Shown: in pieces, positions 4,916-52,449 of the stretch | Position numbering within the stretch: position 1 is the first letter of the stretch | How the letters are laid out: each line of letters opens with the position of its first letter | Virus record (IMG/VR): IMGVR_UViG_3300033145_003233 | Location: 434,001 to 498,000 of that record | DNA: 64,000 nt | Strand: one strand, 5' to 3' | Notes under the pieces: model-generated | The model's input: only the letters and a program-made list of their open reading frames with translations | Told to the model about the DNA's origin: nothing | Database searches by the model: none | Program-made: the position numbers and the translations under genes

Positions 4916-4918
4916 CAA
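4890..4918 (-). promoter_or_regulatory. Probable sigma70 promoter for the leftward cassette
   Basis: TTGTAG (4918-4913), 17-nt spacer, TATAAT (4895-4890); overlapped by the palindrome. Confidence 0.5.
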
Positions 4919-4985
4919 TATTCCTTCTTTATTTTTAAGAAAATATCAAAAAAATTACGATATAATATAAATAATAGGAGAAAAG

Positions 4986-5142: not shown

Positions 5143-8100
5143 TTAATTATTTGTAGCTGAAGTTATTGTGATAATGGGAGTAGTAATTGTTGTGCCAAAA
5201 TCCAAACTGTCATGAGGCAGAACCTCGGCCCGATACTGCTGACCCACAAGCACAATACTATTATCTATTGTAGATGTATGAGTTCCCAGACTGGTAGTAA
5301 TATGGCCTCTGTAATCTTCTACATTATATGTAGTTAATAAATTACCATCATGATCATTAAAAATATAAACTGGATCAGCAGGCCATTCTGTTTCTCCTGG
5401 ATTTTTTCTATACCATCTAATTTCTGTCTGGTCAAATTGTCCACTTTCATCCACGTCGCCAATAAAATTTACCTCAAAATCCAGAAAATACCATGTTAAT
5501 ATTACATCATTATGTTCATCATGAACATTGCGAATATAAGACACATTAGAAACAGTAGGAAGGGCATTTTGAACCACAACCACAGGGCTTGTAATAATAT
5601 CCCCTACAACATTACCTGTTTTTGGTATAACCTGAACAAATATAGAGTTAAGCATTCTAAGGCCATAATCCCTATAACTTTCTGTTCCCACTTCATTAGG
5701 CCAAATTTCATGAATCGGAGCTTGACCTACTCCCCTATCCTCTCCATATATTCCTCTCTTAAAGACTTCATCATTAACATACCATATAATCTCTGATTGG
5801 TTTTCTTGTCCATCAGAGAAAAATACTGTGTCTATAGGAGGATAAATAATGGCCTTTAAATCACCAGCTAACCTACTAGTGATCTGACCTTCATTATCAG
5901 ACATTACTGTTATTTGATCTAAAACAGGAGTGGATTCTACAACTTCTGCCATATTAGATTTTACCCTAGAGCTATATAATTCCCCATCGCTTACTTGTAT
6001 CTCAAAATAAATCCTATCTCCTGAATTCAGTATGGAATCAGATTGTTTTTTTATCCATGTCTCAATATCCTGGATATTAGTTAAATCGTCAGGATATGAT
6101 AAAGAAGTATTAACATAAATAGGATCCATTGGATCTGCTATGTCATTCCATTTGGTTAGATTTTCTAAATAATTTATAACGCTTCCATTAATAAACCACC
6201 GTATTCTCCTTTGAGATATATCTTCTTCTTCGAAATTAGAATCATAATACACATAAGAACTCTCAATAGTGCTAAATCTATTAGAAGTTTCATTTTCAAT
6301 AGCCACAGACTGAGCTTCAGGGGCTGCTTTGGCTAATGGTGGTAACAAATCTTTCCCAGTAGTATATAAATAACCAATACCATATATCTCTAATTCATCT
6401 AATTTAGTTTTATTGGTTAATTTCATACCTATTTTATATTCTCCCGCATTAATAATACCTATCTTATAATCTCCATCTTGATAGTCAGAAGATAATGCAT
6501 AATTTAACACTACTATCCCATCCCTAGGATATAATCTATAATAATTAGTTGGAACAACTTCATCTGATTTGTTATATAGAAGAACAGCAGAGAACGGGTC
6601 CCATGAACCGTATTCTGTTTTTAGTGTGAAGAGATCAACTTTTGCAAGAGGTTCTTGTTGAAACTCTGCTATATCTTGAGAGAATCTTATGGGAATTACT
6701 ACTTTTCCATTTTGATTTACTGCCGGTTGAGAATCAAGAGAATAATCGTTCCAGTTGTGGGAATCAGATTTAGCAACTCCGACATCAATCTGATGATCAT
6801 TAATTTCATTTGCGTCTACCGCTAAAGTTATTTGATATGGCTGAACATCTACTTCTTCTTTGTTGAGATATAAATAAGCTACCTTATAAGCATTATATGT
6901 AATTTGAACAGAAGTAAGAGCAGGAGAATCTGGAGTGGCATCAGATACATTATCATTAATACTAGTAATCAACACTATCTTAAATTTTATATATCTTGCC
7001 AATAAATTTTCAAAATCAACCGCATCTGCATAAGTGTAATTAGCATCTATAGCTGTAAAATTATAACCATCAACGCTCGTCTCAATAGCCCATGTAGCAT
7101 TAGAATCCGAAGAAGGGATAGTAAAAGATATTGCGATGTGATTTATTAACGCCTCTTCTCCCAAATCAGCTATAAATTCATATGTCCCATACCCTAGAGA
7201 TCCCACTGTCTCTCTGTAAAATATCCCTATAATATCATCTAGATAAGCTTCATCATTTACCGTAAGAGCTTGACCCCCAGTTAAAAATGATAATTTATTT
7301 ATATTTTTTGTATCAGAAGAGTTAGCCTTAACAGACAAAGTTACTGGCTCTACAATCGCCATATTAGATATCAATACAGGAACATTTTTATCTCCATCAA
7401 TGTCATTAACTTCTGTAATAGCATTATCAAGAGAAGAGATAGAAACATTAGACTCATTATCAGTAAACAAATAAATGGTCTTTCTCTTATCATCAACATC
7501 ATTGTCAGATAAAACTCTTGAAGCGACAACGATTGCATCATACATAGTTGAAGCGCCAAAAGGAGTAAAATTCTGAAGTTTATTTATCTCATCGATAATT
7601 GTTGAACTAGAGCTAGTATTGGTTCCCAAGACAGAACTAACAGATGGAACCCATTCAGAATCATTATAACAATCTATAATAATATTGCTATTTGTTCTTT
7701 TCTTTGTTTTTTGGAACAAAGAAGTTACATCATTAACTTCTTCTTCTTGAGGACTCGTTCCTCTATCAACTGTTCTATTATAAAAAGAACTTCCATTGAG
7801 AGAATAAACAGTTACCTCAATTGATAATTTATATGGACTCCTTATTACTCCTGCCTCTATTTTTATAACAACTGGTTCCTTATTAGTATCTGTAATCTGC
7901 TCATCGGTTCTAATACCTCCCTGAGAAACGATATTGATATTAGCCACAGTAGCTTCCTCTATAGATGATGTCTCTTCAAATAAATCTTCTGAACGAGGCA
8001 ATATAGTTATAACACATCTGCCACTATTTACAGGGATAGAGTCCGAAGTAAAAAGAACAGGATAAACAACGGTTTTGTCTTCCAATTGATTTAAAGTTTC

Positions 8101-8262
8101 TGTTTCTGTTGTTGAAGATTGATCTCTGAATTTTAGAAATCCCCTTACAACCACAGTTAATGGTTCTGTTACATATCTACCACCCTTTTTAATATCTATA
8201 GGTATAGAGACAGATTGTTTCCCATCTATCTTGCAACTGATTGTTTTATATTCATTTCCCAT
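5143..8262 (-). CDS. Multi-domain virion/adhesion protein: C-terminal half of a vWA domain, jelly-roll-like domain, three Ig-like (IRWxxNG-type) domains
   Basis: GASTMYDAI...IYLFTDNESN...LSFLTGG (vWA second half); RYIKFKIVL...SPALTSVQITY; RRIRWFING, IIWYVND and EIRWYRK modules. Confidence 0.65.
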   Translation of the reverse strand: MGNEYKTISCKIDGKQSVSIPIDIKKGGRYVTEPLTVVVRGFLKFRDQSSTTETETLNQLEDKTVVYPVLFTSDSIPVNSGRCVITILPRSEDLFEETSSIEEATVANINIVSQGGIRTDEQITDTNKEPVVIKIEAGVIRSPYKLSIEVTVYSLNGSSFYNRTVDRGTSPQEEEVNDVTSLFQKTKKRTNSNIIIDCYNDSEWVPSVSSVLGTNTSSSSTIIDEINKLQNFTPFGASTMYDAIVVASRVLSDNDVDDKRKTIYLFTDNESNVSISSLDNAITEVNDIDGDKNVPVLISNMAIVEPVTLSVKANSSDTKNINKLSFLTGGQALTVNDEAYLDDIIGIFYRETVGSLGYGTYEFIADLGEEALINHIAISFTIPSSDSNATWAIETSVDGYNFTAIDANYTYADAVDFENLLARYIKFKIVLITSINDNVSDATPDSPALTSVQITYNAYKVAYLYLNKEEVDVQPYQITLAVDANEINDHQIDVGVAKSDSHNWNDYSLDSQPAVNQNGKVVIPIRFSQDIAEFQQEPLAKVDLFTLKTEYGSWDPFSAVLLYNKSDEVVPTNYYRLYPRDGIVVLNYALSSDYQDGDYKIGIINAGEYKIGMKLTNKTKLDELEIYGIGYLYTTGKDLLPPLAKAAPEAQSVAIENETSNRFSTIESSYVYYDSNFEEEDISQRRIRWFINGSVINYLENLTKWNDIADPMDPIYVNTSLSYPDDLTNIQDIETWIKKQSDSILNSGDRIYFEIQVSDGELYSSRVKSNMAEVVESTPVLDQITVMSDNEGQITSRLAGDLKAIIYPPIDTVFFSDGQENQSEIIWYVNDEVFKRGIYGEDRGVGQAPIHEIWPNEVGTESYRDYGLRMLNSIFVQVIPKTGNVVGDIITSPVVVVQNALPTVSNVSYIRNVHDEHNDVILTWYFLDFEVNFIGDVDESGQFDQTEIRWYRKNPGETEWPADPVYIFNDHDGNLLTTYNVEDYRGHITTSLGTHTSTIDNSIVLVGQQYRAEVLPHDSLDFGTTITTPIITITSATNN

Positions 8263-8264
8263 TT

Positions 8265-11200
8265 TTATATATCAAATATAATATCTACAGTACTTTCCTC
8301 CCTAGCCGTAGTATATCCTCCCACCAAATAAATATAAGGAGTTCCTGTTACTCCAGAATAAACAGCACTAGCACCATGCTTTGCTTTCAATAAAGAAGCC
8401 ATGGCTAACGATGGATTATCATCGTAACTGCTTAGATAAGAAACAGTAGAACCTTGAATAGATATTTTTTCTAATATATCAAGACTTGAATCATCATCAT
8501 TAGCTCCTCCCATTATATAATAATCAGAAGTATCATATGTAGACGGATCAAGATCATATCTAACCATTGCTGATTGGAATTTAGGAATAGGAAAATCTCC
8601 GAGCAAACCACTTCCAAAATTAATCCATTCTCCTGAGGAAGGGACAGTAAAAGATTGTGCTATATTAATATAAAAATCTTCTATTGGATAAATAAACTGA
8701 TCATCAGATTCTATGGCCCCATTAAACACTATAATTTTATTATCATAAATTAAAGTTAAAGGGAATATTCTCTGATAAGTGTTTAATTCATTAGTTCTTA
8801 AAGCACCAGAATATTCCCAGCTATCATCACCTATAGAATATCTTAAAATTCTTTTATTATAATTACGTATGCTAAAATTACTTGAACTTATTACAGCATC
8901 CTGTATTCCACCTATAATATATATATAATTATTAGAGAGCACATCACAATATTGAGCAGCACCTAAAGCCACTCCTGTTTTTTCTTCCCATGCTCCTCCA
9001 TCACCAATAGATGGCATATCAGATAGCTGCTCCCAGGCCCCTGTATCAGTATGATAAACTTCAACCAGAGAGCTTACAGATATTTGACCACCCGAAGTAG
9101 AATCTGCACCTATCCCCCCTATTAAATATATATCATTATTTACAACAACAGACATACCTCCAAATCTATGAGATAACATAGGAGGACCAGTAGTCCATGT
9201 TTCTGTTAAAATATCATATATTTCATTCTTGTTAGACACATCTAAACTATTATTTTTCAACCCTCCCATAACATAAATCTTATTCCCTACCACACCAATA
9301 AATGAATCTCCTCTATTTTCCGACATACCAGGAACATGAACCCATTCATTATCAGAAATATTATATCTTGCCATAGTTGATGAAAATGGAGTTTCTTCTA
9401 TTATCTCAGCATCTTCATCAAGAACACTAGGTTCATCTACTAAATTAGGAAGAGTTACAATCTCATCTTTATAATCCAACGTAAGATTAAAAATAGCCCC
9501 GACATGCCTATCTGTTTTTTCATTTTCATCGTAAACAGAATATATTTCTAGATTCTCAGTTATACTATCTTCCTCTGGTATTTTTGTAGCGGCAACAGTC
9601 ACATCCACATAACTATATCCCTCATCTCCATCAGTTTGAGTATAATAAATACTACTGCCAGCTAAAAAGAAATTATTGCTAGAATTATTTCCCATAGCAG
9701 TATAAACAGGAGTGCCATCTGGAACAGGCTCTCCTTTCCATGATACTTGGACTCTAATATCTATATCAGAATTATGAAGCAACAAGGTATCATTATCTTC
9801 ATCTCGAAAACTATTATTACCTACCTCAGTCACAACTCCAACTAAATAATCATCATCTGGATCTCCATCAGATTCACTATAAAAATAATTAGTTACTCTT
9901 CTCCACCTCGCACTTATAGATAATGGTTCTGCCAAACAAATTGGACAAGGTGGGACTCCATTATAAAAAGTTCCTCCTCCAGATAGTACCAGCGGCTGAT
10001 CATTAACAAACAGAGTTGTTGTACCAGAAATATAAATAACCGGATTCCATTCAGGCAAATCGCAGTTCGTCAACATTCCACTATTTCGACCAAGACATAG
10101 ACAATCATTTATTTCCTTATCTCTATCACATTCCCCCTCTGGCACATATATTCTACCAGCACCAGGTACAAATTTATTAACCCTTATATAGATATAAGTG
10201 ATATCTGATTCTTCAGCATCATTTAATTCTATAAATGCGCTACCATTATCTATAAAACCATCATCGCCCACTGTCAAATAACGACTTCCTGTATATGAAT
10301 CTATTTCTTCATAAATCTCTCCATGCAATATCTCTACTTCATTGCCCCCTCCATTTATCTGCACAACCTGTCCAGAATTAAGCATTAATTCCTGCAAGTC
10401 ATCCTGAGTAGCACAGCTTCTAAAACAAGTAGCAGATGCAAAATCAGAAGAAAGAGCCACAGCTGGATTTCTACTAATTTTAATACGCTTATAATGAGAA
10501 CCATCTGCCCATAAAGGATTTTGATCGGCTATCATCCATCCACCACCACCCCATGTCTGAGTAAGCCCTGTTCCTCTCCACCCTCCATCTATCTCCATTA
10601 AAAACCTAGCTTTAAATTTATCATACTCAAGAGGATTATATCTTAATGACACAAGCTGTTTTGCACTAGCTGTCAATCCTTCATAAACTACAGTTACACT
10701 TATTTCATGAGTCTCATCCATCTCACTGTCACTTTTCGGAATAGGCCCTAGAAATACATTCCTAGCTACTCCGCTTCTGGTATAAGAATATACACCATTA
10801 GTAAGAGGGACATTATCAATAGAATAAATAGTTCTAACCTCTTGCCCTTGCAACTGAGAGATACCCCATTGAACAATAGTTTGATCAGAAGGATAAATAA
10901 TCAAAGAACGATCATAATCATTAGTCTCATAATTAGGGTAATCAGGATTAACAATAAATACTGTAGATCGTTGCTCAGACACATCTCTACCATCAACTTT
11001 AGGAACAGAAGCCTGAATATCCATTTTAAGAACACTTTGGAATAATATATATATATCTTTTATAGACGAATAACCTGCTTGAGATGCCTTTACAAACAAC
11101 CTAACTGCCTGAGGCATATCTGGAGCATACAAAGGGATATCAACATATGAAATAGGAGTTTGAACTATTGCCCCGCCATGCCCCACTTGCTCTTCAATTC

Positions 11201-14372: not shown

Positions 14373-14384
14373 TAATTTCTTTTC

Positions 14385-16322: not shown

Positions 16323-16331
16323 TAAATATCC

Positions 16332-22208: not shown

Positions 22209-22209
22209 G

Positions 22210-28125: not shown

Positions 28126-28141
28126 ATTTCCCCTGCCTTAT

Positions 28142-30247: not shown

Positions 30248-30248
30248 T

Positions 30249-31226: not shown

Positions 31227-31227
31227 T

Positions 31228-32232: not shown

Positions 32233-32233
32233 T

Positions 32234-33778: not shown

Positions 33779-33788
33779 TCATATCACC

Positions 33789-36488: not shown

Positions 36489-36498
36489 TAACTATCCT

Positions 36499-41587: not shown

Positions 41588-41613
41588 TTTCTTTCTTCTA
41601 ATAAATACATCTC

Positions 41614-44600: not shown

Positions 44601-44850
44601 TTTCAGATGCCATATAATTAATAACGCCGATTCCCTCAGCAATAGATATGGAAATTCCAAGACCCTCTTGAAAACCAGCATCACGAACTGTCCATCCCTC
44701 TATTACTCCATTCCCAAATACACTATAAAGACCATATAACTGTTTATCTATTACAACAAACCTATCTATCTCTTTTTGAACATTTATCCTAGTATCTAGT
44801 CTGTCCCCAAAATCAAAAAAAGCTAAATTATAATATCTAGTTTGTCCCAT
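41614..44850 (-). CDS. Tail fibre-like protein: anchor-like N-terminal domain, HxH and fibre repeat, jelly-roll domains, NHL-like propeller
   Basis: YYNLAFFDFG...RFVVIDKQL...GNGVIEGW; HQH...KIDL; IDASKVVTGQFDIDRIP (phage fibre ASKITSGxLxxARIP-like); FLVADTNNNRVLEV. GGGAG SD. Confidence 0.68.
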   Translation of the reverse strand: MGQTRYYNLAFFDFGDRLDTRINVQKEIDRFVVIDKQLYGLYSVFGNGVIEGWTVRDAGFQEGLGISISIAEGIGVINYMASETALPGSVYGLPPNSIIDIYATLSGTTSLDRIINFIYSTITLSGNDSIRLARVSTGASDILYIDNTVRDLIGFEQIIDDAINSHQHRGTPSKIDLEEEVKNQLPGARIEGIDASKVVTGQFDIDRIPLIDHNNLENNGLLTHAALDSFVRTMSQNNKELLGEITSVNLLRSIIFWKYNYANVDQYFINELALIPGVSPDSFIDFAASTANISLPDQCISGVPAQSGIFTSVYWNNTYSFNTANLTNNVLIENDSVSLDRSSEITESIADFSDNIIGFTPETLIIDDSTQAAVTVEEGNRIGRLGGGATFNYFYRKNLTEAKNWDGTYDELVIKVKTSEEIHRPVYMYVVNGSNVNSDGQFGSIEVGDIEGTKKPSTSWTLLAQDESMSSFEEKSFDISNLGLTEVTQIAIYTDDDFIFDIDDIEVRKTNLLAESGTIRFRYSTEASVVFHSIFYNADVPDGTSLSVRVKTASSSDLLSRSAYSFPLSSGGVIASTGTNTEIEIVMTSDDGRALSPTLNSLELRILVSADFTGFVIDTEVEWDRGTPSNISVEDSVEAGKSHLTISTPINVGGRYFAKGGSVSEMNDNNIGVYGFSGNLMPVSPNQAREWSAYSSRGFSRVSSVIRKFNNNFLVADTNNNRVLEVDSIGNLVRGFGSTYSTDSTFYPLSAVYNNVTKVLALVFTKSAVVSDITKIAFYIGSSKLSLTVDDTVINSNKAGNKVLEIQLDDDTSVRLVGITSDLSVNFDAGAFTEDITISAGMTTIGNSIFSALRGITCFIGDFTYIDNISHPIFINETSEDNWIIANSSVHYVVDSNSETANVPDVIEIDPTDSADTDSKISSSDIKFSDYSLGGIYEYEDGRFIISGIEQSTSTLTGISGSDLIGEYGGAASAPAGVLFRASAIDALKNYIGKVVILDKINNKTQVLYVSPDGLYPSDVDGYSNGDMIISESSFADASGRLIRLDSYGNITWNYGSGTFNIINDTKVLNDDSLIVSV

Positions 44851-44861
44851 TGTTAACTCCC

Positions 44862-45095
44862 TTATGCACCAACAACAGGAGAAGTCGTAGTAAATCCTAC
44901 TATGGCGAAATTACCCTCTCCTGTCAAATTTAGCATTTGTCTTGCTCCGAAATCTAGCATCCCGCCTCTTCTATATTTTGTATCTCTATGAGAGGGGGTT
45001 CCCAAACGATTTATTTCCTGATTAATATAATCTCTATTAACATTAAACATTTTTCTAACTGTATTATCTAAATCGTCATTATATGTTTGTCTCAT
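44862..45095 (-). CDS. Small hypothetical virion protein (77 aa)
   Basis: Strong GAGGAG SD; fills the gap between the hub-like and fibre-like genes. Confidence 0.6.
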   Translation of the reverse strand: MRQTYNDDLDNTVRKMFNVNRDYINQEINRLGTPSHRDTKYRRGGMLDFGARQMLNLTGEGNFAIVGFTTTSPVVGA

Positions 45096-45116
45096 AAAAA
45101 ACTCCTCTCAAATCGT

Positions 45117-48100
45117 TTAAAGAACAGTAGTAGCTGCCTGAATAGGCTGATATCTCATACATTCTACATTCATCCACCATTCATTTTTTTCAGCATTAAT
45201 GCTATGAGTTACTTTTACCACCCTACAATCTTCATTATTAATTCTTATAATATCATTGGCCCTTAAAGGCAGACCATACGTTTCAAATTTTATATTTACT
45301 TTAGGTCTAAATGCAACCGAATATTTTCTTACTGTAGCGTTAACTGCCTCAATAGAACCAAACATCCCTTCTTGTTGGTACATCGTTTTTAAATAACCTA
45401 GAAAACCTTCTGTCTCTGGATTTTCCATGGCGCTCCAATTTAATTCATCCCTAATTAACAAATGCATATCCGGAGTATTGCTCATTATCTTAATATGATT
45501 ATATACACCAGAAACTTCATAGTTCCTCTCTACTTTATTAAAAACTAATTGTCCTGGATATTTTTCAGGATTAATAGTAAAATAGTACAAAGGAGCTAAA
45601 GGAACAAGACCTAGATAATCTTGTTCTATAATATCTTGGAAATCTTCATAATGAGCTATGCCAAATTGATCAAAAAAGAATACCTTAGCTGCTCTCTTAG
45701 CTATTTTAGATATCGCGTCCATATAGACATCGCCATCATCGAACTTAAAACTTGGCTGTTCTAATCTGTTATATCCGCTAGGAAGAGCATAAGGTTCCAT
45801 TTTAAATAATCTACCATCGAAGTGATGATAAAACACACCTGGACTCAAAGCATTGGCAGATGCGGATAAATTTCTTATCAAAGAACCTGGATCATATTTA
45901 TTTTCATCTCGGAAACCAGCTATTTGCATAATTTCATAAATAGCATTAATGTCCTTAACACCGTCAAACCACGGAGAGTTAAAAAACCTCGTTCCTTTCA
46001 ATACTGCTGTATAATCTTCTATTTTACAACTCATTATATTCTTACCATATTCATAGTCTATTTTTCCACCATGACACAGCCCTGTAAATAATTTATAAAA
46101 CCCAGTGACTCTAGAATATGCACAATTTTGATACCCCACCCATATCTCTACATAAAAAGTCTTATTTTGCAATGCTAATAAAAAATCGGTAACATTATTT
46201 TCTACCGGCATTTCTCTATTAAGATAAAAATGCAAAGTACCCGTATGTTCTATTTCTGAAAAACCACTTGATGACCAAGTATCTCCATAAGTTAAAACAT
46301 GTTCAGTAGCATCTACAAAATAAGGACTTTGAGCAACAAATGGATTAGGAGTTACCCCCTCAGCAGAAGATGTGTTGTCGTCCCATCTAGGAAGAGAACT
46401 GTGATCAGCTATAAGTCTCATAGATGTCAAAACAGGAGTTTTACAATCAGGTAAAAACCATTCGTCATCTGACAAAGTATCCAAAGTATTTTGATCTGTT
46501 CTCTCACTAACAACAGACGGTCTTTCTGCCGCTCCCACCTTAAATATATGATCTCCGGTCATCATGCCTAATATAACATCAAAAGCCTGATGCCTAGTCT
46601 TATCATCATTTCTATATCTGTACTTTCTAACTACAATATTAGAAGTTTTATAAATAGTATCATTACCCCCAACATCTGGAAATTCTTTAAGAGTCTCATC
46701 ATAAAAGAAACCCCCATAACGATAATTAGAATTTATCATGTTATTATTAGATTCATGATATTCTTTATAAAACTGAGAGTCCTGTACAAATAAAGGCTGA
46801 TTTAACAAAGGTTCTCCAACAGGAGCAACATGAGACCCTAAATCTTGCAAATAAATATCTGCTGATGAGAATAATATGTGATGATTACCCTGATACGGTA
46901 AAAAAAATGGCTGGCTGCTAAATGCCCCCTGCGACTCAGAGGAAGATATCGCCTCTGGCCTACCTTCTCTAAATGCCATTTCCATAGACTCATCTGCCAT
47001 CAGAGGACGAGGAGGATATACAAAAGAGATATATCTTTCTTGATACTGCAAAGGCCCAAATACGAAACCTGCCCTTAAATTCCCCCCCCACAAATGCATA
47101 GGGCCTCTAGGAACAAATAAGGTTCTCAATTTCTCTTTCAAAATTGGCTGTCTTGTATTAGGGTCCCAATCATACTCCCAATCCAATCTTTTAACTACCC
47201 ATGGAGGAACATCTATACCAGGACCACTAAATTGTATTACTAACGATCCTAGATGATTTCTAACTGTTATATCAAAATAATCTGCATTTATTAACTTACT
47301 TCCAACTGTTCCCTCAAAAGTAGAAAATTTCTTAGAAACAAATCCATCTTTTCCAGGCACTACATTAACAAATATAGGATTAGCTCTTTCAGTTATAATA
47401 ATAAAATAATGATCAGTTAAACCTGCTCCCAATTCTATAATATAATATCCTTGAGAACTAAAATCAAAACTTTTAAAATCTGGCGTTTGATTACCCACTG
47501 TAGGAGGCCTAACAGCATAATTAGTAGGAAGCTTAAAATCGCTATTATTAACCATTAAAACATCTTGATTAGCTGTTATATCTAAATAACTATATTTATT
47601 ATTATTAAAAGATGGAATATATTTTTCACTAGATTTAATTGTTGTTTTTTTTGCCTGTTTATAAAATCTTATAAAGAAATCCTCTCCCCTATAAAGAAAT
47701 GTCCTTTTCCCTAATCTCCAGTGATTGCCCTCACCTCTATCTCCGTGTACTTTTTTCTGAAGAGGCATCTGAACATGATAAGGCAATATAACAGGCACTT
47801 TCCCTGCTATTAGTCTCCCCTCATCATCTAAACTATTGTCGTATTCTTCATAAGTACTCTTGATATAATCATATGACAAATCAGAATATGTAACCTCGGA
47901 TTCAGAAACAGTTTGATCTAAATATGTCCATTCAGCAGATGTGCATTCATCAATACCTTCTAAGGTTGAATTATCATCGAAAACACTAGGCATTATAAAC
48001 CAGGACTGCTCTGCTTTATATCTTGTTTTATCAGCATTAGGAACAGGAGCAGTAACTCCTCCTCCATTCTGAGTTATCTCTTTAAAATAAGTTTCAAAAT

Positions 48101-48476
48101 TATCCCCAAAAAGAGATGGATCAGTAATCGGGGTATTACCATCCTGAGGTACGTATTTATAAATATAATTATTCCTAAACACATATTTCGGCTTAAAATG
48201 TATCCCATCAGTATTAGGAGTAACTGTTAAAACATTTTTATGACTATCGGGCAACCATGGTTTAATTCGTTCAAAAGTTCTATCATTAAAAACCAAACCA
48301 TCTTCTTTAACAGGAGACCCATAAAACGGACAAGTATTATTAATAAAACATCTCATCTCTACAGAACCAGAATACTGAGCTGGATCTCCGGAGCAAGGAT
48401 CTTTAAGAGGATACCCTCCCCACCTGTCTATAATTTCTAATACATTCTCTCTATATAATGACGGAACATCAGCCAA
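45117..48476 (-). CDS. Putative baseplate hub / tail-tip protein (gp27/Tal-like C-terminal half)
   Basis: VEIWVGY...LFTG...MSCKIEDY...DAISKIAK...FFFDQFG...YNHIKI...LRANDII.IN...VVKVTHSI...WWMNVEC resembles the hub fold pattern. It is the second gene after the tape-measure-like gene. TTG start with AGGAG SD overlapping the upstream TAG. Confidence 0.55.
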   Translation of the reverse strand: MADVPSLYRENVLEIIDRWGGYPLKDPCSGDPAQYSGSVEMRCFINNTCPFYGSPVKEDGLVFNDRTFERIKPWLPDSHKNVLTVTPNTDGIHFKPKYVFRNNYIYKYVPQDGNTPITDPSLFGDNFETYFKEITQNGGGVTAPVPNADKTRYKAEQSWFIMPSVFDDNSTLEGIDECTSAEWTYLDQTVSESEVTYSDLSYDYIKSTYEEYDNSLDDEGRLIAGKVPVILPYHVQMPLQKKVHGDRGEGNHWRLGKRTFLYRGEDFFIRFYKQAKKTTIKSSEKYIPSFNNNKYSYLDITANQDVLMVNNSDFKLPTNYAVRPPTVGNQTPDFKSFDFSSQGYYIIELGAGLTDHYFIIITERANPIFVNVVPGKDGFVSKKFSTFEGTVGSKLINADYFDITVRNHLGSLVIQFSGPGIDVPPWVVKRLDWEYDWDPNTRQPILKEKLRTLFVPRGPMHLWGGNLRAGFVFGPLQYQERYISFVYPPRPLMADESMEMAFREGRPEAISSSESQGAFSSQPFFLPYQGNHHILFSSADIYLQDLGSHVAPVGEPLLNQPLFVQDSQFYKEYHESNNNMINSNYRYGGFFYDETLKEFPDVGGNDTIYKTSNIVVRKYRYRNDDKTRHQAFDVILGMMTGDHIFKVGAAERPSVVSERTDQNTLDTLSDDEWFLPDCKTPVLTSMRLIADHSSLPRWDDNTSSAEGVTPNPFVAQSPYFVDATEHVLTYGDTWSSSGFSEIEHTGTLHFYLNREMPVENNVTDFLLALQNKTFYVEIWVGYQNCAYSRVTGFYKLFTGLCHGGKIDYEYGKNIMSCKIEDYTAVLKGTRFFNSPWFDGVKDINAIYEIMQIAGFRDENKYDPGSLIRNLSASANALSPGVFYHHFDGRLFKMEPYALPSGYNRLEQPSFKFDDGDVYMDAISKIAKRAAKVFFFDQFGIAHYEDFQDIIEQDYLGLVPLAPLYYFTINPEKYPGQLVFNKVERNYEVSGVYNHIKIMSNTPDMHLLIRDELNWSAMENPETEGFLGYLKTMYQQEGMFGSIEAVNATVRKYSVAFRPKVNIKFETYGLPLRANDIIRINNEDCRVVKVTHSINAEKNEWWMNVECMRYQPIQAATTVL

Positions 48477-48486
48477 TGTTCTTCTC

Positions 48487-51400
48487 CTATAATATATTCA
48501 TAACTTCTAAGGTAAGATTATCCAAACCATCTATTATTATTCCATTCAAATTGCCAAAACTATCTTTGTAAAATACTCTTATTAAACCATTCACAGTAGT
48601 ATAAGCATAAACCTGTGTGTCAGAATCTACTTCAAACCTCTCATCAAATCTTTCTAACATTTCTTTATCATATGGGAAACGAATAAATAGTGAAGAGTCA
48701 GAATCATTTATTCCATCATCTATTTCCCCAATTTTTACTCCCTTTATATTATCGGGGATTTTGCCAACTAAAAATATAGGTCTATGTACAGTATCTTCTG
48801 TAATCTTAAGATGTTCTCTCATCTGATCATCATATTTATTCCCGCTTGAATCATAATAAGGGAATAACAGATCAGAATAAAAATGCCGTATAAACAGCAT
48901 CCCATAATGAAAATATAATACTGATACTAAATTAGTATTATAATCGTTTCTAACTATTTGTATGTTCTGTATTTCTTCTGATAAACCTCTATTTAACTCA
49001 TCGTCAAGATAAGTCTTATGAATCACTTGTTCTTCTATATCATAGCTCCAAGTAAAATAATTATCACTTCTTTTAACAGATAATTTGCCTTCTTTTAACA
49101 TGAATAAACGAAGAATGCCTTCTCCATCTAAATAAACCGCGTACGGATTACCCTCAAAATCACCCTTCATCTCATTTGTATTTCCAGAAAATTCAAAACG
49201 AGGAATTTGTTTTTTATCAGTATCAAAAGTAGCAGGATTAGGTGGATCTTCATTATATATATTAATATTATCTCTAATCTCTATTTGATCCTTAAAATAC
49301 TCATCATCAAAATATCCATCAATAAAATAACTTGGAAAACGCCTAAGAGAAAGACCCTCCGTAGAATAATTCCCCCAATAAGCTCTCTCTGGATCATCTA
49401 GAGACTGGTCGTAATCCCCCACATCATAAGAAGAAGGAACTGCATATTCTACAAAAGCATCCTCTTCAACTAGTAAATTAGTATTAATCCTTTTATACAT
49501 CAAAAAAGAACCATTAAGAGTGTAAAAAAGATGAATATAATCAGAATTAACATCTTTGATAACAAAAGGCATACCAGCAAATTCTCCCTCAACCAGCCTA
49601 ATTAAATCCCTGTGAATTAACCATTCTTCTCCATCATTAAGAGAAGTAGCAACATCAATATTACCAGAAGTTGTATTCGCATAAAAAACTAACAACTCTC
49701 CCATCCCATCATATACAACTGCACTTTGACCAGATTTTATCTTATAACTGTCCAAATCAAGTTGCAGAGTACTATTGGGATTACTTACCCCTACAAATCT
49801 TCCATCTATTTTTGTTATATCTATTTTCTTCCAAAAAGCACCTAAGAATTGGACAGGACCACCATAATAATAATTAAAATCAACAATCATTTTGGTTGTT
49901 CCATCGATAGTAGCTCCAGACTTAAAAACCCTAAAATTACTTACAGAACTTTCTGTTTGCTCAAAATAAAAAGAAATATATTTTTCTTTCTCCGTCAATG
50001 TCTCATAATTAGCATAAGAAAATTCTATTTCCAATCTCTTAACATACCAATCAGATGGAATAATTAACTTAGGAGGATCATCATCAAAATCAAGATTAAA
50101 AGCAGAACCAGTTCCATCATACAATTCTTCTGTCCACCAAAAATCTCCCTCTTCTATATCCTCCATTCTACAAATATTAATAATATCATCTGCAACAGGA
50201 GAACCGTGGCTATAACTAGGTCTATCCCCCAATATTCTATTTTGACCTACTATTAAACTGCCATCATGATTATAGGCATCTTTTACATGACTTTTAGAAG
50301 TATCGATATGCAATGCTTGCAACTGACCCTCAAAAAAGTCATCATTTAATTTATGATATGACAAACCATAATTAACATTTTCATCATTAAATGCTAAAGT
50401 AGATGCCCCTATATAATTATTAGTATCTAAAGATATGTTATGGGGAACAAATGGCTGTGTATCAACATATATCCAGCTATAATTATCTAAAGAATTCCCT
50501 GCCATTTTTTCAATATATACCCTCGTTCTTCTTGTAAAATTTCCACAAAAATAAGGAGTTTCAGCTTTCCAGTAACTTTCTATTGAAGCCCCACTAGGTC
50601 TCCATTCAAAAACTTCATTCTCTATATGATCCACATCATACCAAGCCCCTGGACCTTCACTTTGAGCATCATAGTTTTGAGACCAATAATTATAAGAATG
50701 TATATGAAATGGCTCTTCACAAGAATAAGATTTTAATGGTTGGGCATTAGCTGTTTCAAAATCTATGAAAGATAAATCATAATATTTAAGATCTATAGAA
50801 GAACTCAAAGACATAATATCTAAATGGGAAATCCCGACCCCAGAAGTATCAGAATCATCACTATATGTGCTAACATTTTTCAAGGCTTCAGCAAATGGCC
50901 TATAATAGGGAATTTTTTCTCTATCGAATAACAAACTATTAGCAACTTCAGATATGTCAAATAAATACCCAGGCTCTCTATCTAAATCTATTCTGTTTTC
51001 TATGGATATATTTAAATCAGATGGCAGATAAGATCCATCAGTTCCTGAAGGATAAGTAAAATCTAAACCTTCCAAATAATCTGTAAACCAATCCTGATCT
51101 CTTATCTCAGATCGTGGAAGCATTACTGTGATATCTCCATCATCATATAATAATACTCCTCGATAATCCGCCGCCCAGAATTTCTTTACACTAGTAGAAA
51201 TAGATTCTGATAATCTCCATCCCTCTATTTCATCTGCCACATCAGTAAGATTAAAATCGTCTTCTTCTCTTTCTCTTCTTTTTATTGTAAAATAATTAGA
51301 TGAAGCAAGAACGTAATCGCTATCAGAAGAATAATAATCTTCTAATAAATCTATATTATATATAGTTAACCCAGTTGGTAATTTAGGAACTTTCCATGTC

Positions 51401-52449
51401 TTTATTTGATAATTCCAAGCATCTACATCACTAGCTATGGCCCCTATAAATCCTGAGATACCAATAGTATTGCCCTGACCTATCTTGCCCAGATGAGATA
51501 AGTTCTGCCTAAGATGCCTATTAGAGGCAACTGAATAAGTAATATAAATAGTTTCCCCTATAACTAAATCAGAAACATCTATTCTAATTTGTTTATCTGT
51601 AGCATCTATACCAGCTACTCCGCTCAATTTATAAGGATATGCTTTACCTCCAGAGGCATCATAATTATCTCCGCGAAACTTTAATTTTCTTTCATCTCTC
51701 ACTACCTTTATAAATAGCTGTTCTTGATCCTCATATTTAACATCTTCAAATTTTACCTCTTCATCTCCAGCTCCTCCGAACAACCCATCACTATCTGTAG
51801 CCCCATCTATCCTTTTTCTCCTTGACCCCCTCCATGTTCCATCACTATATTTTCCCAATATATCTAATTGCTCAGGAGTGAAAGGAAGACCAACCACCCT
51901 ATCAACATTATTTTCATCTTCTTCTTCTGTAATTATATGCCTCTTTACTATACCGAAGACAGAAAGGGGATAACTATTTAAAGAAATGATTCCAGTATCT
52001 AATATTTGTTGATTGACTTTGATTGGATAATTTATTTTAGTTTCTGCATCAAGTAAGTGTAAGGTTATATATGTCAACCCAGATGTTACCCCCCCAAATC
52101 CCATAGATGGTAATGCAAAATTACCTATCAAACCCATCATAGGAATAAAAGAAAGAGCACCAGGAGATATGGGATTCCGAACTGCGCTTTTCATTACCTT
52201 ACTAAAATCTATTTCAACTTTTATTTTACTGGCCGGTAATAATTTCTTTCTTTCTACTACTTTGATAATATTACCATCTTCATCCCTATCAACTATATAA
52301 ACAGTTCCTTTAGGAGGATTTTTTAATCTGTTAATATTGAATGTATCAACAGGAACATATTCTTTATTGATAGATGTTTTTATATAGCCATCTCTAATTA
52401 AATCGCTATTATCATAACAAAGATATGTTCTTCTATTATTAAAAGCCAT
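48487..52449 (-). CDS. Large virion protein immediately downstream of the tape-measure-like gene (distal-tail position), with Asp-box/propeller-like C-terminal part
   Basis: Gene position; VATSLNDGEEW Asp-box; IHLFYT, LRLFML and IRVFYKD blade-like strands. No family recognised. Confidence 0.45.
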   Translation of the reverse strand: MAFNNRRTYLCYDNSDLIRDGYIKTSINKEYVPVDTFNINRLKNPPKGTVYIVDRDEDGNIIKVVERKKLLPASKIKVEIDFSKVMKSAVRNPISPGALSFIPMMGLIGNFALPSMGFGGVTSGLTYITLHLLDAETKINYPIKVNQQILDTGIISLNSYPLSVFGIVKRHIITEEEDENNVDRVVGLPFTPEQLDILGKYSDGTWRGSRRKRIDGATDSDGLFGGAGDEEVKFEDVKYEDQEQLFIKVVRDERKLKFRGDNYDASGGKAYPYKLSGVAGIDATDKQIRIDVSDLVIGETIYITYSVASNRHLRQNLSHLGKIGQGNTIGISGFIGAIASDVDAWNYQIKTWKVPKLPTGLTIYNIDLLEDYYSSDSDYVLASSNYFTIKRREREEDDFNLTDVADEIEGWRLSESISTSVKKFWAADYRGVLLYDDGDITVMLPRSEIRDQDWFTDYLEGLDFTYPSGTDGSYLPSDLNISIENRIDLDREPGYLFDISEVANSLLFDREKIPYYRPFAEALKNVSTYSDDSDTSGVGISHLDIMSLSSSIDLKYYDLSFIDFETANAQPLKSYSCEEPFHIHSYNYWSQNYDAQSEGPGAWYDVDHIENEVFEWRPSGASIESYWKAETPYFCGNFTRRTRVYIEKMAGNSLDNYSWIYVDTQPFVPHNISLDTNNYIGASTLAFNDENVNYGLSYHKLNDDFFEGQLQALHIDTSKSHVKDAYNHDGSLIVGQNRILGDRPSYSHGSPVADDIINICRMEDIEEGDFWWTEELYDGTGSAFNLDFDDDPPKLIIPSDWYVKRLEIEFSYANYETLTEKEKYISFYFEQTESSVSNFRVFKSGATIDGTTKMIVDFNYYYGGPVQFLGAFWKKIDITKIDGRFVGVSNPNSTLQLDLDSYKIKSGQSAVVYDGMGELLVFYANTTSGNIDVATSLNDGEEWLIHRDLIRLVEGEFAGMPFVIKDVNSDYIHLFYTLNGSFLMYKRINTNLLVEEDAFVEYAVPSSYDVGDYDQSLDDPERAYWGNYSTEGLSLRRFPSYFIDGYFDDEYFKDQIEIRDNINIYNEDPPNPATFDTDKKQIPRFEFSGNTNEMKGDFEGNPYAVYLDGEGILRLFMLKEGKLSVKRSDNYFTWSYDIEEQVIHKTYLDDELNRGLSEEIQNIQIVRNDYNTNLVSVLYFHYGMLFIRHFYSDLLFPYYDSSGNKYDDQMREHLKITEDTVHRPIFLVGKIPDNIKGVKIGEIDDGINDSDSSLFIRFPYDKEMLERFDERFEVDSDTQVYAYTTVNGLIRVFYKDSFGNLNGIIIDGLDNLTLEVMNIL

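What the first reader, a model, noticed from the sequence alone, without database searches (positions are those of the whole stretch)
5143..52449. About 47 kb tail-tip/adhesion system built from a shared toolkit of modules
Seen: 16 co-oriented genes encode about 15,700 aa downstream of the tape-measure-like gene, eight of them over 1000 aa. They carry many propellers (Kelch, FG-GAP, Asp-box, Reg_prop, NHL-like), FN3, LamG, InlB-B and several private modules reused across genes. Established: typical phage tail-tip and fibre modules are much smaller. Inference: the virion has an unusually elaborate multi-branched adsorption apparatus, possibly for thick glycan or S-layer envelopes, or a broad host range. 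This may be an undescribed virion architecture.
Basis: partly seen in the sequence, partly recalled or inferred. Interest (0 to 1): 0.75.

Follow-up and report, generated by a model that had tools for sequence, protein, structure and literature searches.

The report
Giant tail-tip module of a megaphage
This 47-kb run of 16 genes is the tail-end (host-attachment) gene set of an uncultivated 548-kb bacteriophage that appears to have a very long non-contractile tail; the gene set is far larger than in any studied phage and is conserved across a widespread, undescribed group of huge phages.

Summary
There are 16 co-oriented, tightly packed genes on the minus strand (15,715 aa), eight over 1000 aa, carrying Kelch, FG-GAP, Reg_prop, NHL and sialidase-like propellers plus FN3, LamG, InlB-B and VWA domains.

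The window lies in a 547,943-bp virus record with portal, large terminase, prohead protease and one tail-tube gene. No sheath was found. Upstream of the block lie:
- a tail tube gene;
- a G/GT-type chaperone with a conserved -1 slippery heptamer;
- a 5139-aa tape measure expanded by tandem repeats.

The second gene of the block (1119 aa) folds as a gp27/Mu gp44-type tail hub (Z 21) with a lectin-like insert. So the block is the distal-tail module of a siphovirus-like megaphage.

The "shared toolkit" reading is mostly wrong. Only two ~100-aa modules are shared between genes. Every gene tested in relatives (14 of the 16) has a collinear ortholog in them: 14 genes at 31-69% identity in closer contigs, a reduced six-gene core at 24-49% in distant ones. 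The gene order is fixed, not a shuffled cassette set. No GenBank phage has homologs of four of the five block proteins searched; the fifth (2035 aa) matched only in its Kelch domain. The hub family has 243 clusters at 50% identity in metagenomes.

Verdict: a new, greatly enlarged variant of a known kind. Virion incorporation, tail length and host are untested.

The parts
52468..64000 (-). Tape measure protein. This is the C-terminal 3843 codons; the full gene is genome 486468-501887 (5139 aa) and starts 3887 nt beyond the window end.
   Evidence: Lies right after a G/GT chaperone with a -1 slippery site and a tail tube gene. The N-terminal ~1100 aa is homologous to the shorter gene at the same position in relatives. 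Tandem repeats of 25/50 aa and 156 aa. Nearest language-model clusters are tape measure proteins, score 0.95. No Pfam or PHROG match.
48487..52449 (-). 1320-aa protein at the distal-tail-protein (Dit) position. N-terminal beta-rich region of about 460 aa, then a C-terminal sialidase/GH43-like beta-propeller (aa ~670-1197).
   Evidence: AlphaFold2 model of aa 1-1200, pLDDT 83.5. Propeller matches at Z 13.5. Sixty-one homologs plus the query itself, all unnamed. Orthologs in relatives are 1208-1452 aa, and 1430-2660 aa in distant ones. A Dit fold was not demonstrated.
45117..48476 (-). 1119-aa tail hub (gp27 / Mu gp44 / gpD fold; Tal-like) with a large internal lectin/GH16-like jelly-roll insert (aa ~95-690).
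   Evidence: AlphaFold2 model, pLDDT 83.7. VIA-align Z 21.1 to 9g8s_q, 20.6 to 3d37, 19.8 to Mu gp44 1wru, spanning model residues 41-1111. Lectin-like hits at Z 9-10.6. Foldseek E 1e-12 to baseplate hubs. 243 family clusters at E<=1e-30.
44862..45095 (-). 77-aa conserved small protein between the hub and the next large protein; function unknown.
   Evidence: ORF. A 75-78-aa ORF sits at the same place in relatives. Identity is 27-55%.
41614..44850 (-). 1078-aa protein: N-terminal ~100-aa docking module shared with the 1958-aa protein, a central region, and a C-terminal NHL-repeat beta-propeller.
   Evidence: Family profile hits the NHL repeat of 6d69 at 1.4e-10. N-terminal module shared with the 1958-aa family, hhalign 95%. 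Orthologs at 39-69% identity; distant relatives keep only a 535-546-aa version.
40487..41587 (-). 366-aa GT4-family glycosyltransferase embedded in the module.
   Evidence: Glyco_trans_1_4 at 1.1e-15 and Glycos_transf_1. phrog_2170 at 7e-32. Present at the same place in closer relatives at 43-68% identity, absent from the distant relatives sampled.
36499..40494 (-). 1331-aa protein with W-x-D/S-N-R...I-Y repeats near the C-terminus (propeller-like) and a C-terminal ~100-aa module shared with the 1971-aa protein.
   Evidence: No Pfam, PHROG or PDB sequence hit. C-terminal module hhalign 94% to the 1971-aa family. Orthologs at 28-49% identity.
33789..36488 (-). 899-aa protein with a divergent InlB B-repeat (Flg_new_2) near the N-terminus.
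   Evidence: PF18998 at 6.4e-18. Orthologs carry the same Pfam hit. Shares a ~70-aa stretch with the 1971-aa C-terminus.
32234..33778 (-). 514-aa protein, no recognisable domain.
   Evidence: No Pfam or PHROG hit. The fetched loci of relatives did not cover this gene.
31228..32232 (-). 334-aa protein, weak tail-fibre-like signal only.
   Evidence: phrog_11439 'tail fiber protein' at E 0.0037, weak. Orthologs at 33-59% identity.
30249..31235 (-). 328-aa protein with a LamG/ConA-like domain just below the Pfam cut-off.
   Evidence: Laminin_G_3 at 1.1e-5, 26.1 bits against a cut-off of 27.6. Orthologs at 29-56% identity.
28142..30247 (-). 701-aa protein with an N-terminal Ig-like domain (Rha78A-N type).
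   Evidence: PF25788 at 1.7e-11. Orthologs at 38-58% identity.
22210..28125 (-). 1971-aa protein with Reg_prop-type and other propeller repeats, and a duplicated C-terminal module.
   Evidence: Reg_prop at 9.4e-10, 38 bits against a cut-off of 20.4. Direct repeat at 22561/22900. Orthologs of 1923-2459 aa at 36-57% identity.
16332..22208 (-). 1958-aa protein: N-terminal docking module, tandem FN3 domains, then Asp-box/Ycf48-like propeller regions. Part of the six-gene core kept in distant relatives.
   Evidence: fn3 at 6.3e-16. Family profile hits titin and RPTP FN3 arrays at 2e-15, with a weak Ycf48-like hit. Asp-box motifs. Full-length orthologs at 28-58% identity in both closer and distant relatives.
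14385..16322 (-). 645-aa FG-GAP beta-propeller protein.
   Evidence: FG-GAP_2 at 6.4e-55, 5 stretches. The C-terminal ~280 aa is conserved even in distant relatives.
8265..14372 (-). 2035-aa protein: N-terminal VWA domain with an invariant DxSGSM (MIDAS-type) motif, a LamG domain, and a C-terminal Kelch propeller.
   Evidence: Kelch_6 at 6.8e-25 and Laminin_G_3 at 6.9e-16. Invariant D101-S103-G104-S105-M106 in the family alignment. Profile hits Kelch structures at 3e-56. Orthologs of 1917-2974 aa at 29-54% identity.
5143..8262 (-). 1039-aa last gene of the block; only a weak VWA-like signal.
   Evidence: VWA_2 at 0.0077, below cut-off. Orthologs at 40-61% identity at the same terminal position. 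A 432-nt gap follows, then unrelated genes: DUF4379, DUF4238 and a helicase.

Best explanation
The block is the distal-tail (tail-tip, baseplate and fibre) gene module of an uncultivated 548-kb phage with a long, probably non-contractile tail.

Shown:
- The gene order is tail tube, then a G/GT chaperone made by a -1 frameshift, then a small gene, then a 5139-aa tape measure, then the 16 genes of the block.
- The second block gene encodes a gp27/Mu gp44-type hub.
- The other large genes encode soluble multidomain proteins with no signal peptide. They are rich in beta-propellers, lectin-like jelly rolls, FN3/Ig spacers and a VWA domain.
- Fourteen of the 16 genes have collinear orthologs in a widespread clade of large viral contigs.

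Inferred:
- The 1320-aa protein forms the ring under the last tube disc (Dit role).
- The hub trimer closes the tube around the tape-measure C-termini.
- The 1078-aa and 1958-aa proteins dock through their shared N-terminal module as fibre-like or arm-like appendages, and the remaining giants build on them.
- The result would be a multi-megadalton apparatus (1.7 MDa per single set of chains) that binds, and perhaps cuts, surface polysaccharide through many low-affinity propeller and lectin sites before the tape measure and DNA exit.
- The embedded GT4 enzyme most likely glycosylates a virion or host-surface component and is not itself a structural part.
- From the rule of about 0.15 nm of tail per tape-measure residue (recalled from lambda work, not tested here), tails in this clade would range from about 150 nm to about 770 nm in this phage.
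For: The host record is a virus: a 547,943-bp IMG/VR record rated 100% complete by CheckV, with no 16S gene. It has portal (phrog_16240, 2e-43), large terminase (phrog_2, 3.5e-24, with tblastn hits to annotated terminases) and a prohead protease domain.

Tail context: a single tail tube gene (PF18906, 7e-14; tblastn to siphophage 'major tail protein'). The G-like ORF ends with the slippery G_GGA_AAC two codons before its stop. The -1 frame extension of 78 aa is conserved at protein level in six relatives, each with a canonical heptamer.

Tape measure: the gene is length-variable among relatives, 1004 to 5139 aa, with tandem repeats. Its nearest language-model clusters are tape measure proteins.

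Hub fold: Z 21, covering about 297 of 311 residues of solved hubs.

Block proteins: propeller, lectin, FN3 and VWA domains. No signal peptides or transmembrane segments. Collinear orthologs in at least 20 independent contigs of up to 488 kb. GC content and strand are uniform with the rest of the genome.
Against: - There is no proteomic or imaging evidence that any of these proteins is in the virion.
- PHROGs and Pfam give no tail annotation for the large proteins.
- The Dit fold of the 1320-aa protein could not be shown.
- Absence of a sheath rests on two Pfam models and on gene order only.
- The major capsid protein was not identified.
- One gene is an enzyme, and some of the others could be non-structural.
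- Catalytic activity of the sialidase/GH-like propellers was not examined.
- The host is unknown.
Confidence: 0.8

Rival explanations
1. The block is the baseplate and fibre set of a contractile (myovirus-like) megaphage whose sheath is too divergent to recognise.
For: The best structural matches of the hub are mostly hubs of contractile systems such as Mu gp44, phiCD508, R-type pyocin and diffocin. The only cultured megaphage, phage G, has a contractile tail (PMC12484599). A module of this size is closer to T4-type baseplates than to known siphophage tips.
Against: Phage_sheath_1 and Phage_sheath_1C give no match anywhere in the genome. The gene directly upstream of the tube gene is only 144 aa, here and in two relatives (L017, L022), so there is no room for a sheath at its usual place. 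The tube protein's only tblastn relatives are siphophage major tail proteins. No Baseplate_J/gp6- or gp25-type wedge domains appeared in the Pfam scans of the block. The gp27 fold is shared by siphophage Tal proteins, for example 80alpha, T5 pb3 and Bxb1.
Confidence: 0.1
2. Only the first few genes (1320-aa protein, hub, 77-aa protein, 1078-aa protein) are tail-tip parts. The distal giants (1971, 1958, 645, 2035 and 1039 aa) are not tail components but head or neck fibres, decoration proteins, or non-virion proteins that act on the host surface or on biofilm during infection.
For: None of the distal giants has a tail-specific family hit. Other fibre-like genes (collagen-repeat and LamG proteins) and glycan-modifying enzymes lie elsewhere in the structural region, so surface decoration is not confined to this block. 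A glycosyltransferase sits inside the block.
Against: In distant relatives the 1958-, 645- and 2035-like genes follow the hub and the short 1078-like gene directly, with nothing between. That is the classic place for tail fibres and receptor-binding proteins. The 1958-aa protein shares its N-terminal docking module with the 1078-aa protein next to the hub. All genes form one tightly packed co-directional unit. None has an export signal.
Confidence: 0.08
3. The block is a cellular surface-adhesin island or an assembly chimera wrongly joined to phage sequence.
For: Kelch, FG-GAP, VWA, FN3 and LamG domains are typical of cellular adhesins. Two relatives were binned into Patescibacteria/WWE3 metagenome-assembled genomes.
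Against: The same gene order, with tube, chaperones and tape measure attached, recurs on many independent viral contigs. There are no signal peptides. GC content, skew and strand match the rest of the 548-kb record. The one hit among species-representative genomes is a 13-kb contig, typical of mis-binning.
Confidence: 0.02

Closest known systems
Siphophage tail-tip complexes built on tape measure - Dit - Tal/hub (T5 pb2-pb9-pb3-pb4-pb1, SPP1 gp19.1/gp21, staphylococcal 80alpha, mycobacteriophage Bxb1/Douge, lactococcal TP901-1/p2 baseplates)
   Same: The gene order is the same: tube, frameshifted chaperone, tape measure, then distal tail genes. The hub has the gp27-like fold. Matches include 80alpha (Z 17.3), Douge (14.4), Bxb1 (11.3), T5 pb3 (10.4) and p2 (8.9), all. 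Carbohydrate-binding domains are inserted into core tip proteins, as in 'evolved' Dit and Tal proteins (recalled from the literature, not tested).
   Different: This module has about 3-10 times more protein, 15.7 thousand aa in 16 genes. The hub insert is about 600 aa. The Dit-position protein is 1320 aa and ends in a propeller. There are at least seven propeller-bearing proteins. There is no sequence homology to any GenBank phage tip protein. The genome is 548 kb, which by my recollection is more than twice the size of any cultured non-contractile-tailed phage.
gp27 / Mu gp44 / P2 gpD / VgrG-N baseplate hub family
   Same: The four-domain hub fold is matched over nearly the whole length of solved hubs: Z 19.8-21.1, rmsd 3.3-4.3 A, about 300 aligned residues.
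   Different: No Pfam Phage_GPD or other sequence-family hit. The fold is split by a lectin/GH16-like insert of about 600 aa. There is no C-terminal spike or lysin extension, since the fold ends at the C-terminus.
Bacillus phage G, the only cultured megaphage (499 kb)
   Same: Comparable genome size. It also has a frameshifted chaperone and a long tape measure (PMC12484599). Phage G gp424, gp425 and gp427 are the top, though weak, viral structural matches to the 1320-aa protein.
   Different: Phage G has a contractile sheath and P2/T4-like baseplate wedge proteins (PMC12484599). Here no sheath or wedge domains were found, and there is no sequence homology.
Huge phages of Al-Shayeb et al. 2020 (PMC7162821)
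   Same: Uncultivated genomes of several hundred kb from metagenomes. That paper notes proteins of up to 7,694 aa 'tentatively annotated as structural'. The nearest terminase in GenBank belongs to one of these, LR745208 (26% identity).
   Different: That paper does not analyse tail modules. LR745208 and all other GenBank phages lack the hub and tip genes found here.

Membership tests
gp27 / Mu gp44 / gpD-type tail hub (N-terminal domain of Tal) | Four-domain hub fold matching solved hubs over their whole length | tested here: met
   Model pLDDT 83.7. Z 21.1 (9g8s_q), 20.6 (3d37), 20.4 (3cdd), 19.8 (1wru), about 300 of 311-328 residues aligned.
gp27 / Mu gp44 / gpD-type tail hub (N-terminal domain of Tal) | Gene lies just downstream of the tape measure, one gene after it | tested here: met
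   Order is tape measure, 1320-aa gene, 1119-aa gene, here and in all relatives.
gp27 / Mu gp44 / gpD-type tail hub (N-terminal domain of Tal) | Sequence-family membership (Pfam Phage_GPD or related, or a PHROG hub family) | tested here: not met
   No Pfam or PHROG hit for the 1119-aa protein. Similarity is structural only.
gp27 / Mu gp44 / gpD-type tail hub (N-terminal domain of Tal) | Forms a trimer that closes the tail tube | not testable with these tools
   Three copies of 1119 aa exceed the complex-prediction size limit. Needs cryo-EM or a larger multimer prediction.
Tape measure protein | Lies directly downstream of a tail-assembly chaperone pair made by a programmed -1 frameshift, and upstream of the tip genes | tested here: met
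   Slippery G_GGA_AAC with a conserved 78-aa -1 extension. Canonical heptamers are found in six relatives. One 139-aa gene intervenes.
Tape measure protein | Length varies between relatives through internal tandem repeats | tested here: met
   1004-5139 aa across relatives. Repeats of 25/50 aa and 156 aa, with copies 45-63% identical.
Tape measure protein | Match to a curated tape-measure family (Pfam TMP_2/TMP_3/PhageMin_Tail or a PHROG) | tested here: not met
   No hit. Only language-model neighbours are tape measure clusters, score 0.95.
Tape measure protein | Protein length sets tail length | not testable with these tools
   Needs electron microscopy of particles from relatives with different gene lengths.
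Distal tail protein (Dit) | First gene after the tape measure | tested here: met
   The 1320-aa gene starts 18 nt after the tape measure stop. The position is conserved in relatives.
Distal tail protein (Dit) | N-terminal tube-like ring-forming fold | tested here: inconclusive
   The N-terminal ~460 aa is beta-rich with long hairpins, but propeller matches swamp every fold search. hhalign against the tube family was negative.
Non-contractile (siphovirus-type) long tail | Tail tube protein present and sheath absent | tested here: met
   One Phage_tube_2 gene. No Phage_sheath_1 or Phage_sheath_1C match. A 144-aa gene lies directly upstream of the tube gene. The absence of a sheath is negative evidence only.
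Non-contractile (siphovirus-type) long tail | Flexible non-contractile tail seen in particles | not testable with these tools
   No isolate or images exist.
Receptor-binding proteins diversified by a diversity-generating retroelement | Reverse transcriptase with a template/variable repeat pair in a tail gene | tested here: not met
   No RVT_1 match in the genome. No such repeat pair in the window.
   Bits against cut-off: Kelch_6 86.6 vs 25.3; FG-GAP_2 183.6 vs 23; Reg_prop 38 vs 20.4; fn3 58.8 vs 25; Laminin_G_3 59.2 vs 27.6; Flg_new_2 65 vs 23.6. NHL at 1.4e-10 by family profile. Asp-box rests on motifs and a sialidase-like fold only.

The most novel reading that the evidence does not exclude
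A widespread, never-imaged lineage of huge phages has non-contractile tails whose length varies about five-fold between relatives (roughly 0.15 to 0.8 micrometres). The tails end in a conserved multi-megadalton organelle studded with propellers and lectin domains. This would be a fixed machine for finding and crossing a thick polysaccharide or sheath layer, rather than a set of swappable receptor binders. It would be a virion architecture without precedent among studied phages, and the first megaphage group with siphovirus-type tails.
Probability: 0.35. Interest if true: 0.75.

Novelty: new variant of a known kind. Interest (0 to 1): 0.55.

Why it matters
Huge phages are known almost only from sequence. 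Their virion architecture and hosts are open questions, and the only cultured example has a contractile tail.

This locus gives a concrete, testable picture for one widespread lineage:
- a siphovirus-like gene order;
- a tape measure whose length changes five-fold between relatives, a natural experiment on tail-length control;
- a conserved hub, which could serve as a marker gene for the clade (243 clusters at 50% identity);
- a distal-tail gene set larger than the whole T4 baseplate-plus-fibre set as I recall it (about 9-10 thousand aa).

The module also shows that giant propeller and lectin proteins in huge phages can be conserved structural parts rather than fast-changing host-range cassettes. 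If the proteins are confirmed in particles, they are a rich source of new glycan-binding and possibly glycan-cutting domains.

Tried and rejected
Annotation and homology searches that gave nothing:
- PHROGs annotation of the large proteins: essentially blank.
- tblastn of the 1320-aa protein, hub, 1078-aa and 1958-aa proteins against 50,697 GenBank phage records: no match. The 2035-aa protein matched only through its Kelch domain.
- Profile searches of PDB sequences with the 1320-aa, tube, 1331-aa and 1971-aa families: nothing useful.
- Cluster names for ten NCBI-sourced hub homologs: none recorded.

Virion genes in the own genome:
- Pfam models for sheath (2 models), Terminase_6N, Terminase_6C and HK97-type capsid: no match.
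- Terminase and portal were then found with PHROGs. The major capsid protein was never identified.

Attempts to show a Dit fold in the 1320-aa protein all failed or were swamped by its propeller:
- PDB Foldseek and VIA-align;
- BFVD;
- ESM Atlas by features and by shape;
- hhalign against the tube family.

Other checks:
- All-against-all BLAST and phmmer for reused modules: almost empty. Only hhalign of family profiles showed two small shared modules.
- The first self-BLAST of the tape measure showed no repeats. A windowed search and lag analysis did.
- Host clue: the scan of species-representative genomes gave only a 13-kb contig in a Patescibacteria bin. I judged this mis-binning.
- Diversity-generating retroelement idea: rejected, no reverse transcriptase.
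- Terminator after the last gene: none found.
- Literature searches found no description of this clade's tail.

Complex prediction was not used. The relevant chains exceed its size limit, and no binding claim in this report depends on it.

Full report
**1. What is in the sequence**

All ORFs of the window lie on the minus strand. Between 5143 and 52449 there are 15 ORFs of at least 150 aa. From the 52449 end to the 5143 end their lengths are 1320, 1119, 1078, 366, 1331, 899, 514, 334, 328, 701, 1971, 1958, 645, 2035 and 1039 aa. A conserved 77-aa ORF lies at 44862-45095. Genes abut or overlap with gaps of 1-26 nt, so this is one long co-directional unit. GC content (0.31-0.36) and skew match the flanks and the whole genome.

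**2. The genome is a phage**

The window is positions 434,001-498,000 of a single 547,943-bp contig. The genome tool reports it as an IMG/VR virus record, 100% complete by CheckV, with no 16S rRNA gene. It has 29 tRNA genes, and almost all genes over about 440 kb are on one strand.

Virion genes are present:
- portal: genome 18958-21243, phrog_16240, 2e-43;
- large terminase: genome 33639-35537, phrog_2, 3.5e-24;
- a prohead-protease domain at the start of an 1868-aa protein.

The terminase hits annotated terminases by tblastn. The best hit is an uncultured 485-kb phage, LR745208, at only 26% identity. If the linear record is joined into a circle, the minus-strand order is head genes, then connector region, then tail genes, then the block. 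None of the 15 block proteins of 150 aa or more has a signal-peptide-like N-terminus or a transmembrane segment (the 77-aa ORF was not scanned).

**3. Context immediately upstream**

Two genes before the giant ORF lies a 368-aa protein. It matches Pfam Phage_tube_2 (7e-14, above cut-off) and phrog_290, and by tblastn only 'major tail protein' genes of Gordonia and Rhodococcus siphophages. It is the only tube gene in the genome.

The next ORF (144 aa) ends ...CTG GGA AAC TAA. The heptamer G_GGA_AAC is a canonical X_XXY_YYZ slippery site two codons before the stop. The -1 frame stays open for 78 codons. Six relatives carry GGGAAAC, GGGAAAA, AAAAAAC or AAAAAAA at the same place, and their -1 extensions are similar in protein sequence. 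This is the G/GT-type programmed frameshift that marks the tail-assembly chaperone of long-tailed phages (established knowledge, recalled).

A 139-aa gene follows, and then the giant ORF. In full this ORF is 5139 aa (genome 486468-501887). Its features:
- one Cys (0.02% of residues) and little Trp (0.4%);
- a Gly-rich hydrophobic stretch near residue 500;
- no Pfam or PHROG hit;
- an N-terminal 1295 aa whose nearest protein-language-model clusters are nearly all tape measure proteins, score 0.95;
- an N-terminal ~1100 aa, and part of the C-terminus, homologous to the gene at the same position in relatives.

That gene is 1004, 1068, 1085, 1095, 1125, 1188, 1314, 1725, 1787, at least 2085, and 3414 aa in different relatives. 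The extra length here consists of tandem repeats: a 25/50-aa period over residues ~1200-2450, a 156-aa period over ~2400-3350 with copies 45-63% identical, and five 12-aa repeats near the C-terminus. I am therefore confident it is the tape measure.

No sheath was found with two Pfam models. The gene directly upstream of the tube gene is only 144 aa. The tail is therefore most likely non-contractile.

**4. The block itself**

*Hub (gene 2, 1119 aa).* This protein has 83 homologs in the word-indexed search (84 rows including the query itself; most align over nearly its full length), all unnamed, on contigs of up to 473 kb. An AlphaFold2 model from 42 sequences has pLDDT 83.7. It matches solved tail and baseplate hubs over their whole length:
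- phiCD508 needle hub, Z 21.1;
- Neisseria and MuSo2 prophage gpD-like proteins, Z 20.6 and 20.4;
- Mu gp44, Z 19.8;
- siphophage hubs 80alpha (17.3), Douge (14.4), Bxb1 (11.3) and T5 pb3 (10.4).

The match spans model residues 41-1111, so the hub fold is interrupted by a large insert at about residues 95-690. That insert matches legume-lectin, GH16 and galectin-type jelly rolls at Z 9-10.6.

*Gene 1 (1320 aa, Dit position).* The model of residues 1-1200 has pLDDT 83.5. Its C-terminal half is a sialidase/GH43/Kelch-like propeller (Z 13.5). The N-terminal ~460 aa is beta-rich with long hairpins. I could not show that it has a Dit or tube-like fold.

*The other genes:*
- 1078 aa: NHL propeller (family profile, 1.4e-10).
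- 366 aa: GT4 glycosyltransferase.
- 899 aa: divergent InlB B-repeat.
- 701 aa: Ig-like Rha78A-N domain.
- 1971 aa: Reg_prop-type repeats.
- 1958 aa: tandem FN3 domains plus Asp-box/Ycf48-like regions.
- 645 aa: FG-GAP propeller (6e-55).
- 2035 aa: VWA domain with an invariant DxSGSM motif, LamG, and a Kelch propeller.
- 328 aa: a near-threshold LamG domain.
- 1331, 514, 334, 1039 and 77 aa: no assigned domain.

**5. A conserved set, not a shuffled toolkit**

Within the genome, BLAST and phmmer find almost no similarity between block genes. Profile-profile comparison confirms only two shared modules:
- the first ~100 aa of the 1078-aa and 1958-aa families (95% probability);
- the last ~100 aa of the 1331-aa and 1971-aa families (94%), also seen in the 899-aa protein by BLAST.

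The N-terminal module also occurs at the start of otherwise different proteins on three further viral contigs (L034, L036, L037). This is the behaviour expected of a fibre-docking domain.

Relatives tell the opposite story from a toolkit. IMG/VR and other assemblies gave about 25 loci.

In the closer relatives the whole order is kept: tube, chaperones, tape measure, ~1300, hub, ~77, ~1080, (optional small gene), glycosyltransferase, ~1330, ~900..., 334, 328, 701, 1971, 1958, 645, 2035, 1039. Orthologs are full-length or near-full-length at 31-69% identity. The 899-aa gene was covered only partly and the 514-aa gene not at all.

More distant relatives have a reduced core: a 1430-2660-aa first protein, the hub, a ~540-aa version of the 1078-aa protein, then full-length orthologs of the 1958-aa protein (28-30% identity), the C-terminal part of the 645-aa protein, and the 2035-aa protein (2350-2970 aa). 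Pairwise identity across this core runs from 24% to 49%.

Against the best-covered close relative, identities are rather even: 41-46% for the 899-, 1331- and 645-aa proteins, and 51-67% for the rest. No gene stands out as a hypervariable receptor binder. There is no reverse transcriptase in the genome.

An exhaustive profile search with the hub family found 493 representative proteins (E<=1e-3), 243 at E<=1e-30, among 1.84 billion clusters at 50% identity. The clade is large and diverse. None of 50,697 GenBank phage records has a homolog of the 1320-aa protein, the hub, the 1078-aa or the 1958-aa protein.

**6. How it most likely works**

Shown: the gene order, the frameshift signal, the hub fold, the domain content, the conservation, and the lack of export signals.

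Inferred:
- The 1320-aa protein caps the last tube ring.
- The hub trimer closes the tube over the tape-measure C-termini.
- The 1078-aa and 1958-aa proteins attach through their common N-terminal module.
- The remaining giants extend this into a large peripheral structure.

One copy of each chain is already 1.7 MDa. With the three-fold or six-fold copy numbers usual for tail tips, the assembly would be 5-10 MDa. Seven or more propeller-bearing proteins, several lectin-like jelly rolls, FN3/Ig spacers and a metal-site VWA domain point to multivalent binding of surface polysaccharide or glycoprotein. The sialidase/GH43-like and GH16-like folds leave room for glycan cleavage, but I did not examine catalytic residues. 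The conserved GT4 enzyme probably modifies a virion or host-surface component.

With about 0.15 nm of tail per tape-measure residue (the lambda rule, recalled), the tail would be about 770 nm here, against about 150-270 nm in most relatives.

The host is unknown. Two relatives sit in Patescibacteria/WWE3 bins. I regard that as mis-binning of short low-GC contigs.

**7. Rivals**

- A contractile tail with an unrecognised sheath is possible, but gene order, the two sheath models and the tube's relatives speak against it.
- The distal giants might be non-tail decoration or non-virion proteins. Against this, they sit directly after the hub in the reduced core of distant relatives, and the docking module is shared.
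- A cellular island or chimera is excluded by the repeated synteny.

**8. Comparison with what is known, and novelty**

Functionally and in gene order this is a siphophage tail-tip module (tape measure, Dit position, Tal/hub, fibres), so it is of a known kind. It differs in four ways:
- scale, several times any studied siphophage tip, and more protein than the whole T4 baseplate with fibres as I recall it;
- the split hub;
- a complete lack of sequence relatives among cultured phages;
- its setting in a 0.55-Mb genome.

The paper that defined huge phages only remarks that some proteins reach 7,694 aa and are 'tentatively' structural (PMC7162821). The one cultured megaphage has a sheath and P2/T4-like baseplate (PMC12484599).

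I rate this a new variant of a known kind, with moderate-to-good interest. The claim of a new virion architecture is plausible but rests on inference until particles are seen.

Noticed in passing
L001:9137-10162 (genome 507137-508162, minus strand; outside the window): A 341-aa protein matches Pfam Volactin, an archaeal actin-like family, at 4.4e-59 over its full length. It sits among the head-tail connector genes of this phage. A phage-encoded actin homolog in a megaphage may relate to intracellular organisation.
   Followed up: no
window 52468-64000 and beyond (genome 486468-501887): The tape measure is 5139 aa, against 1004-3414 aa in relatives. It was expanded by tandem repeats of 25/50 aa and 156 aa. 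It also has five near-identical 36-nt repeats at window 52754-52969. The predicted tail is about 0.77 micrometres long.
   Followed up: partly
genome 503118-502457 (L001 about 4457-5118, minus strand): A canonical -1 frameshift signal, G_GGA_AAC, lies two codons before the stop of the 144-aa chaperone-like ORF. The 78-aa extension is conserved in relatives. A further conserved 139-aa gene lies between it and the tape measure.
   Followed up: yes
window 3367-4710: A 447-aa protein made of four DUF4379 treble-clef zinc-finger repeats (1.1e-66), encoded by 210-nt DNA repeats. It lies directly after the block and is followed by a DUF4238 protein (2344-3318) and a ResIII/DEAD helicase (2-1513).
   Followed up: no
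genome 525-548 kb and 1-18 kb (L002, L003, L004): More surface-type genes lie outside the block: two collagen-repeat fibre-like proteins (416 and 1188 aa), two LamG_3 proteins (582 and 560 aa), a GT9-like protein (773 aa), a methyltransferase-glycosyltransferase fusion (1126 aa) and a sulfotransferase-like protein. The virion may carry further fibres and glycan modifications.
   Followed up: partly
genome 18958-21243 (L040:958-3243): The 761-aa portal protein carries a C-terminal HNH-endonuclease-like region (phrog_559, aa 604-726). LAGLIDADG homing endonuclease genes also lie in the structural region (genome 523361-524377 and 9782-10549).
   Followed up: no
genome 12200-17806 (L004): An 1868-aa protein has a prohead-protease-like domain only in its first ~200 aa. 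The rest is unassigned. It may be a giant scaffold/protease fusion.
   Followed up: no
L006:17120-18277; L007:17229-18089; L008:17144-18046: Relatives carry different small insertions between the 1078-like gene and the glycosyltransferase: an IS605 TnpB/Cas12f-like gene, an R2K ATP-grasp gene, and a CapR-like gene. This junction seems to tolerate insertions.
   Followed up: no
L038 (JAIPJN010000018.1) and protein P0084: Fragments of related phages are filed in public Patescibacteria and WWE3 metagenome-assembled genomes. This is probably mis-binning of short low-GC phage contigs.
   Followed up: partly
genome 171,686-183,550: 27 of the 29 tRNA genes are packed into about 12 kb on the minus strand. 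Nearly all genes from about 100 kb to the end of the record are on the minus strand, with a strongly negative GC skew.
   Followed up: no
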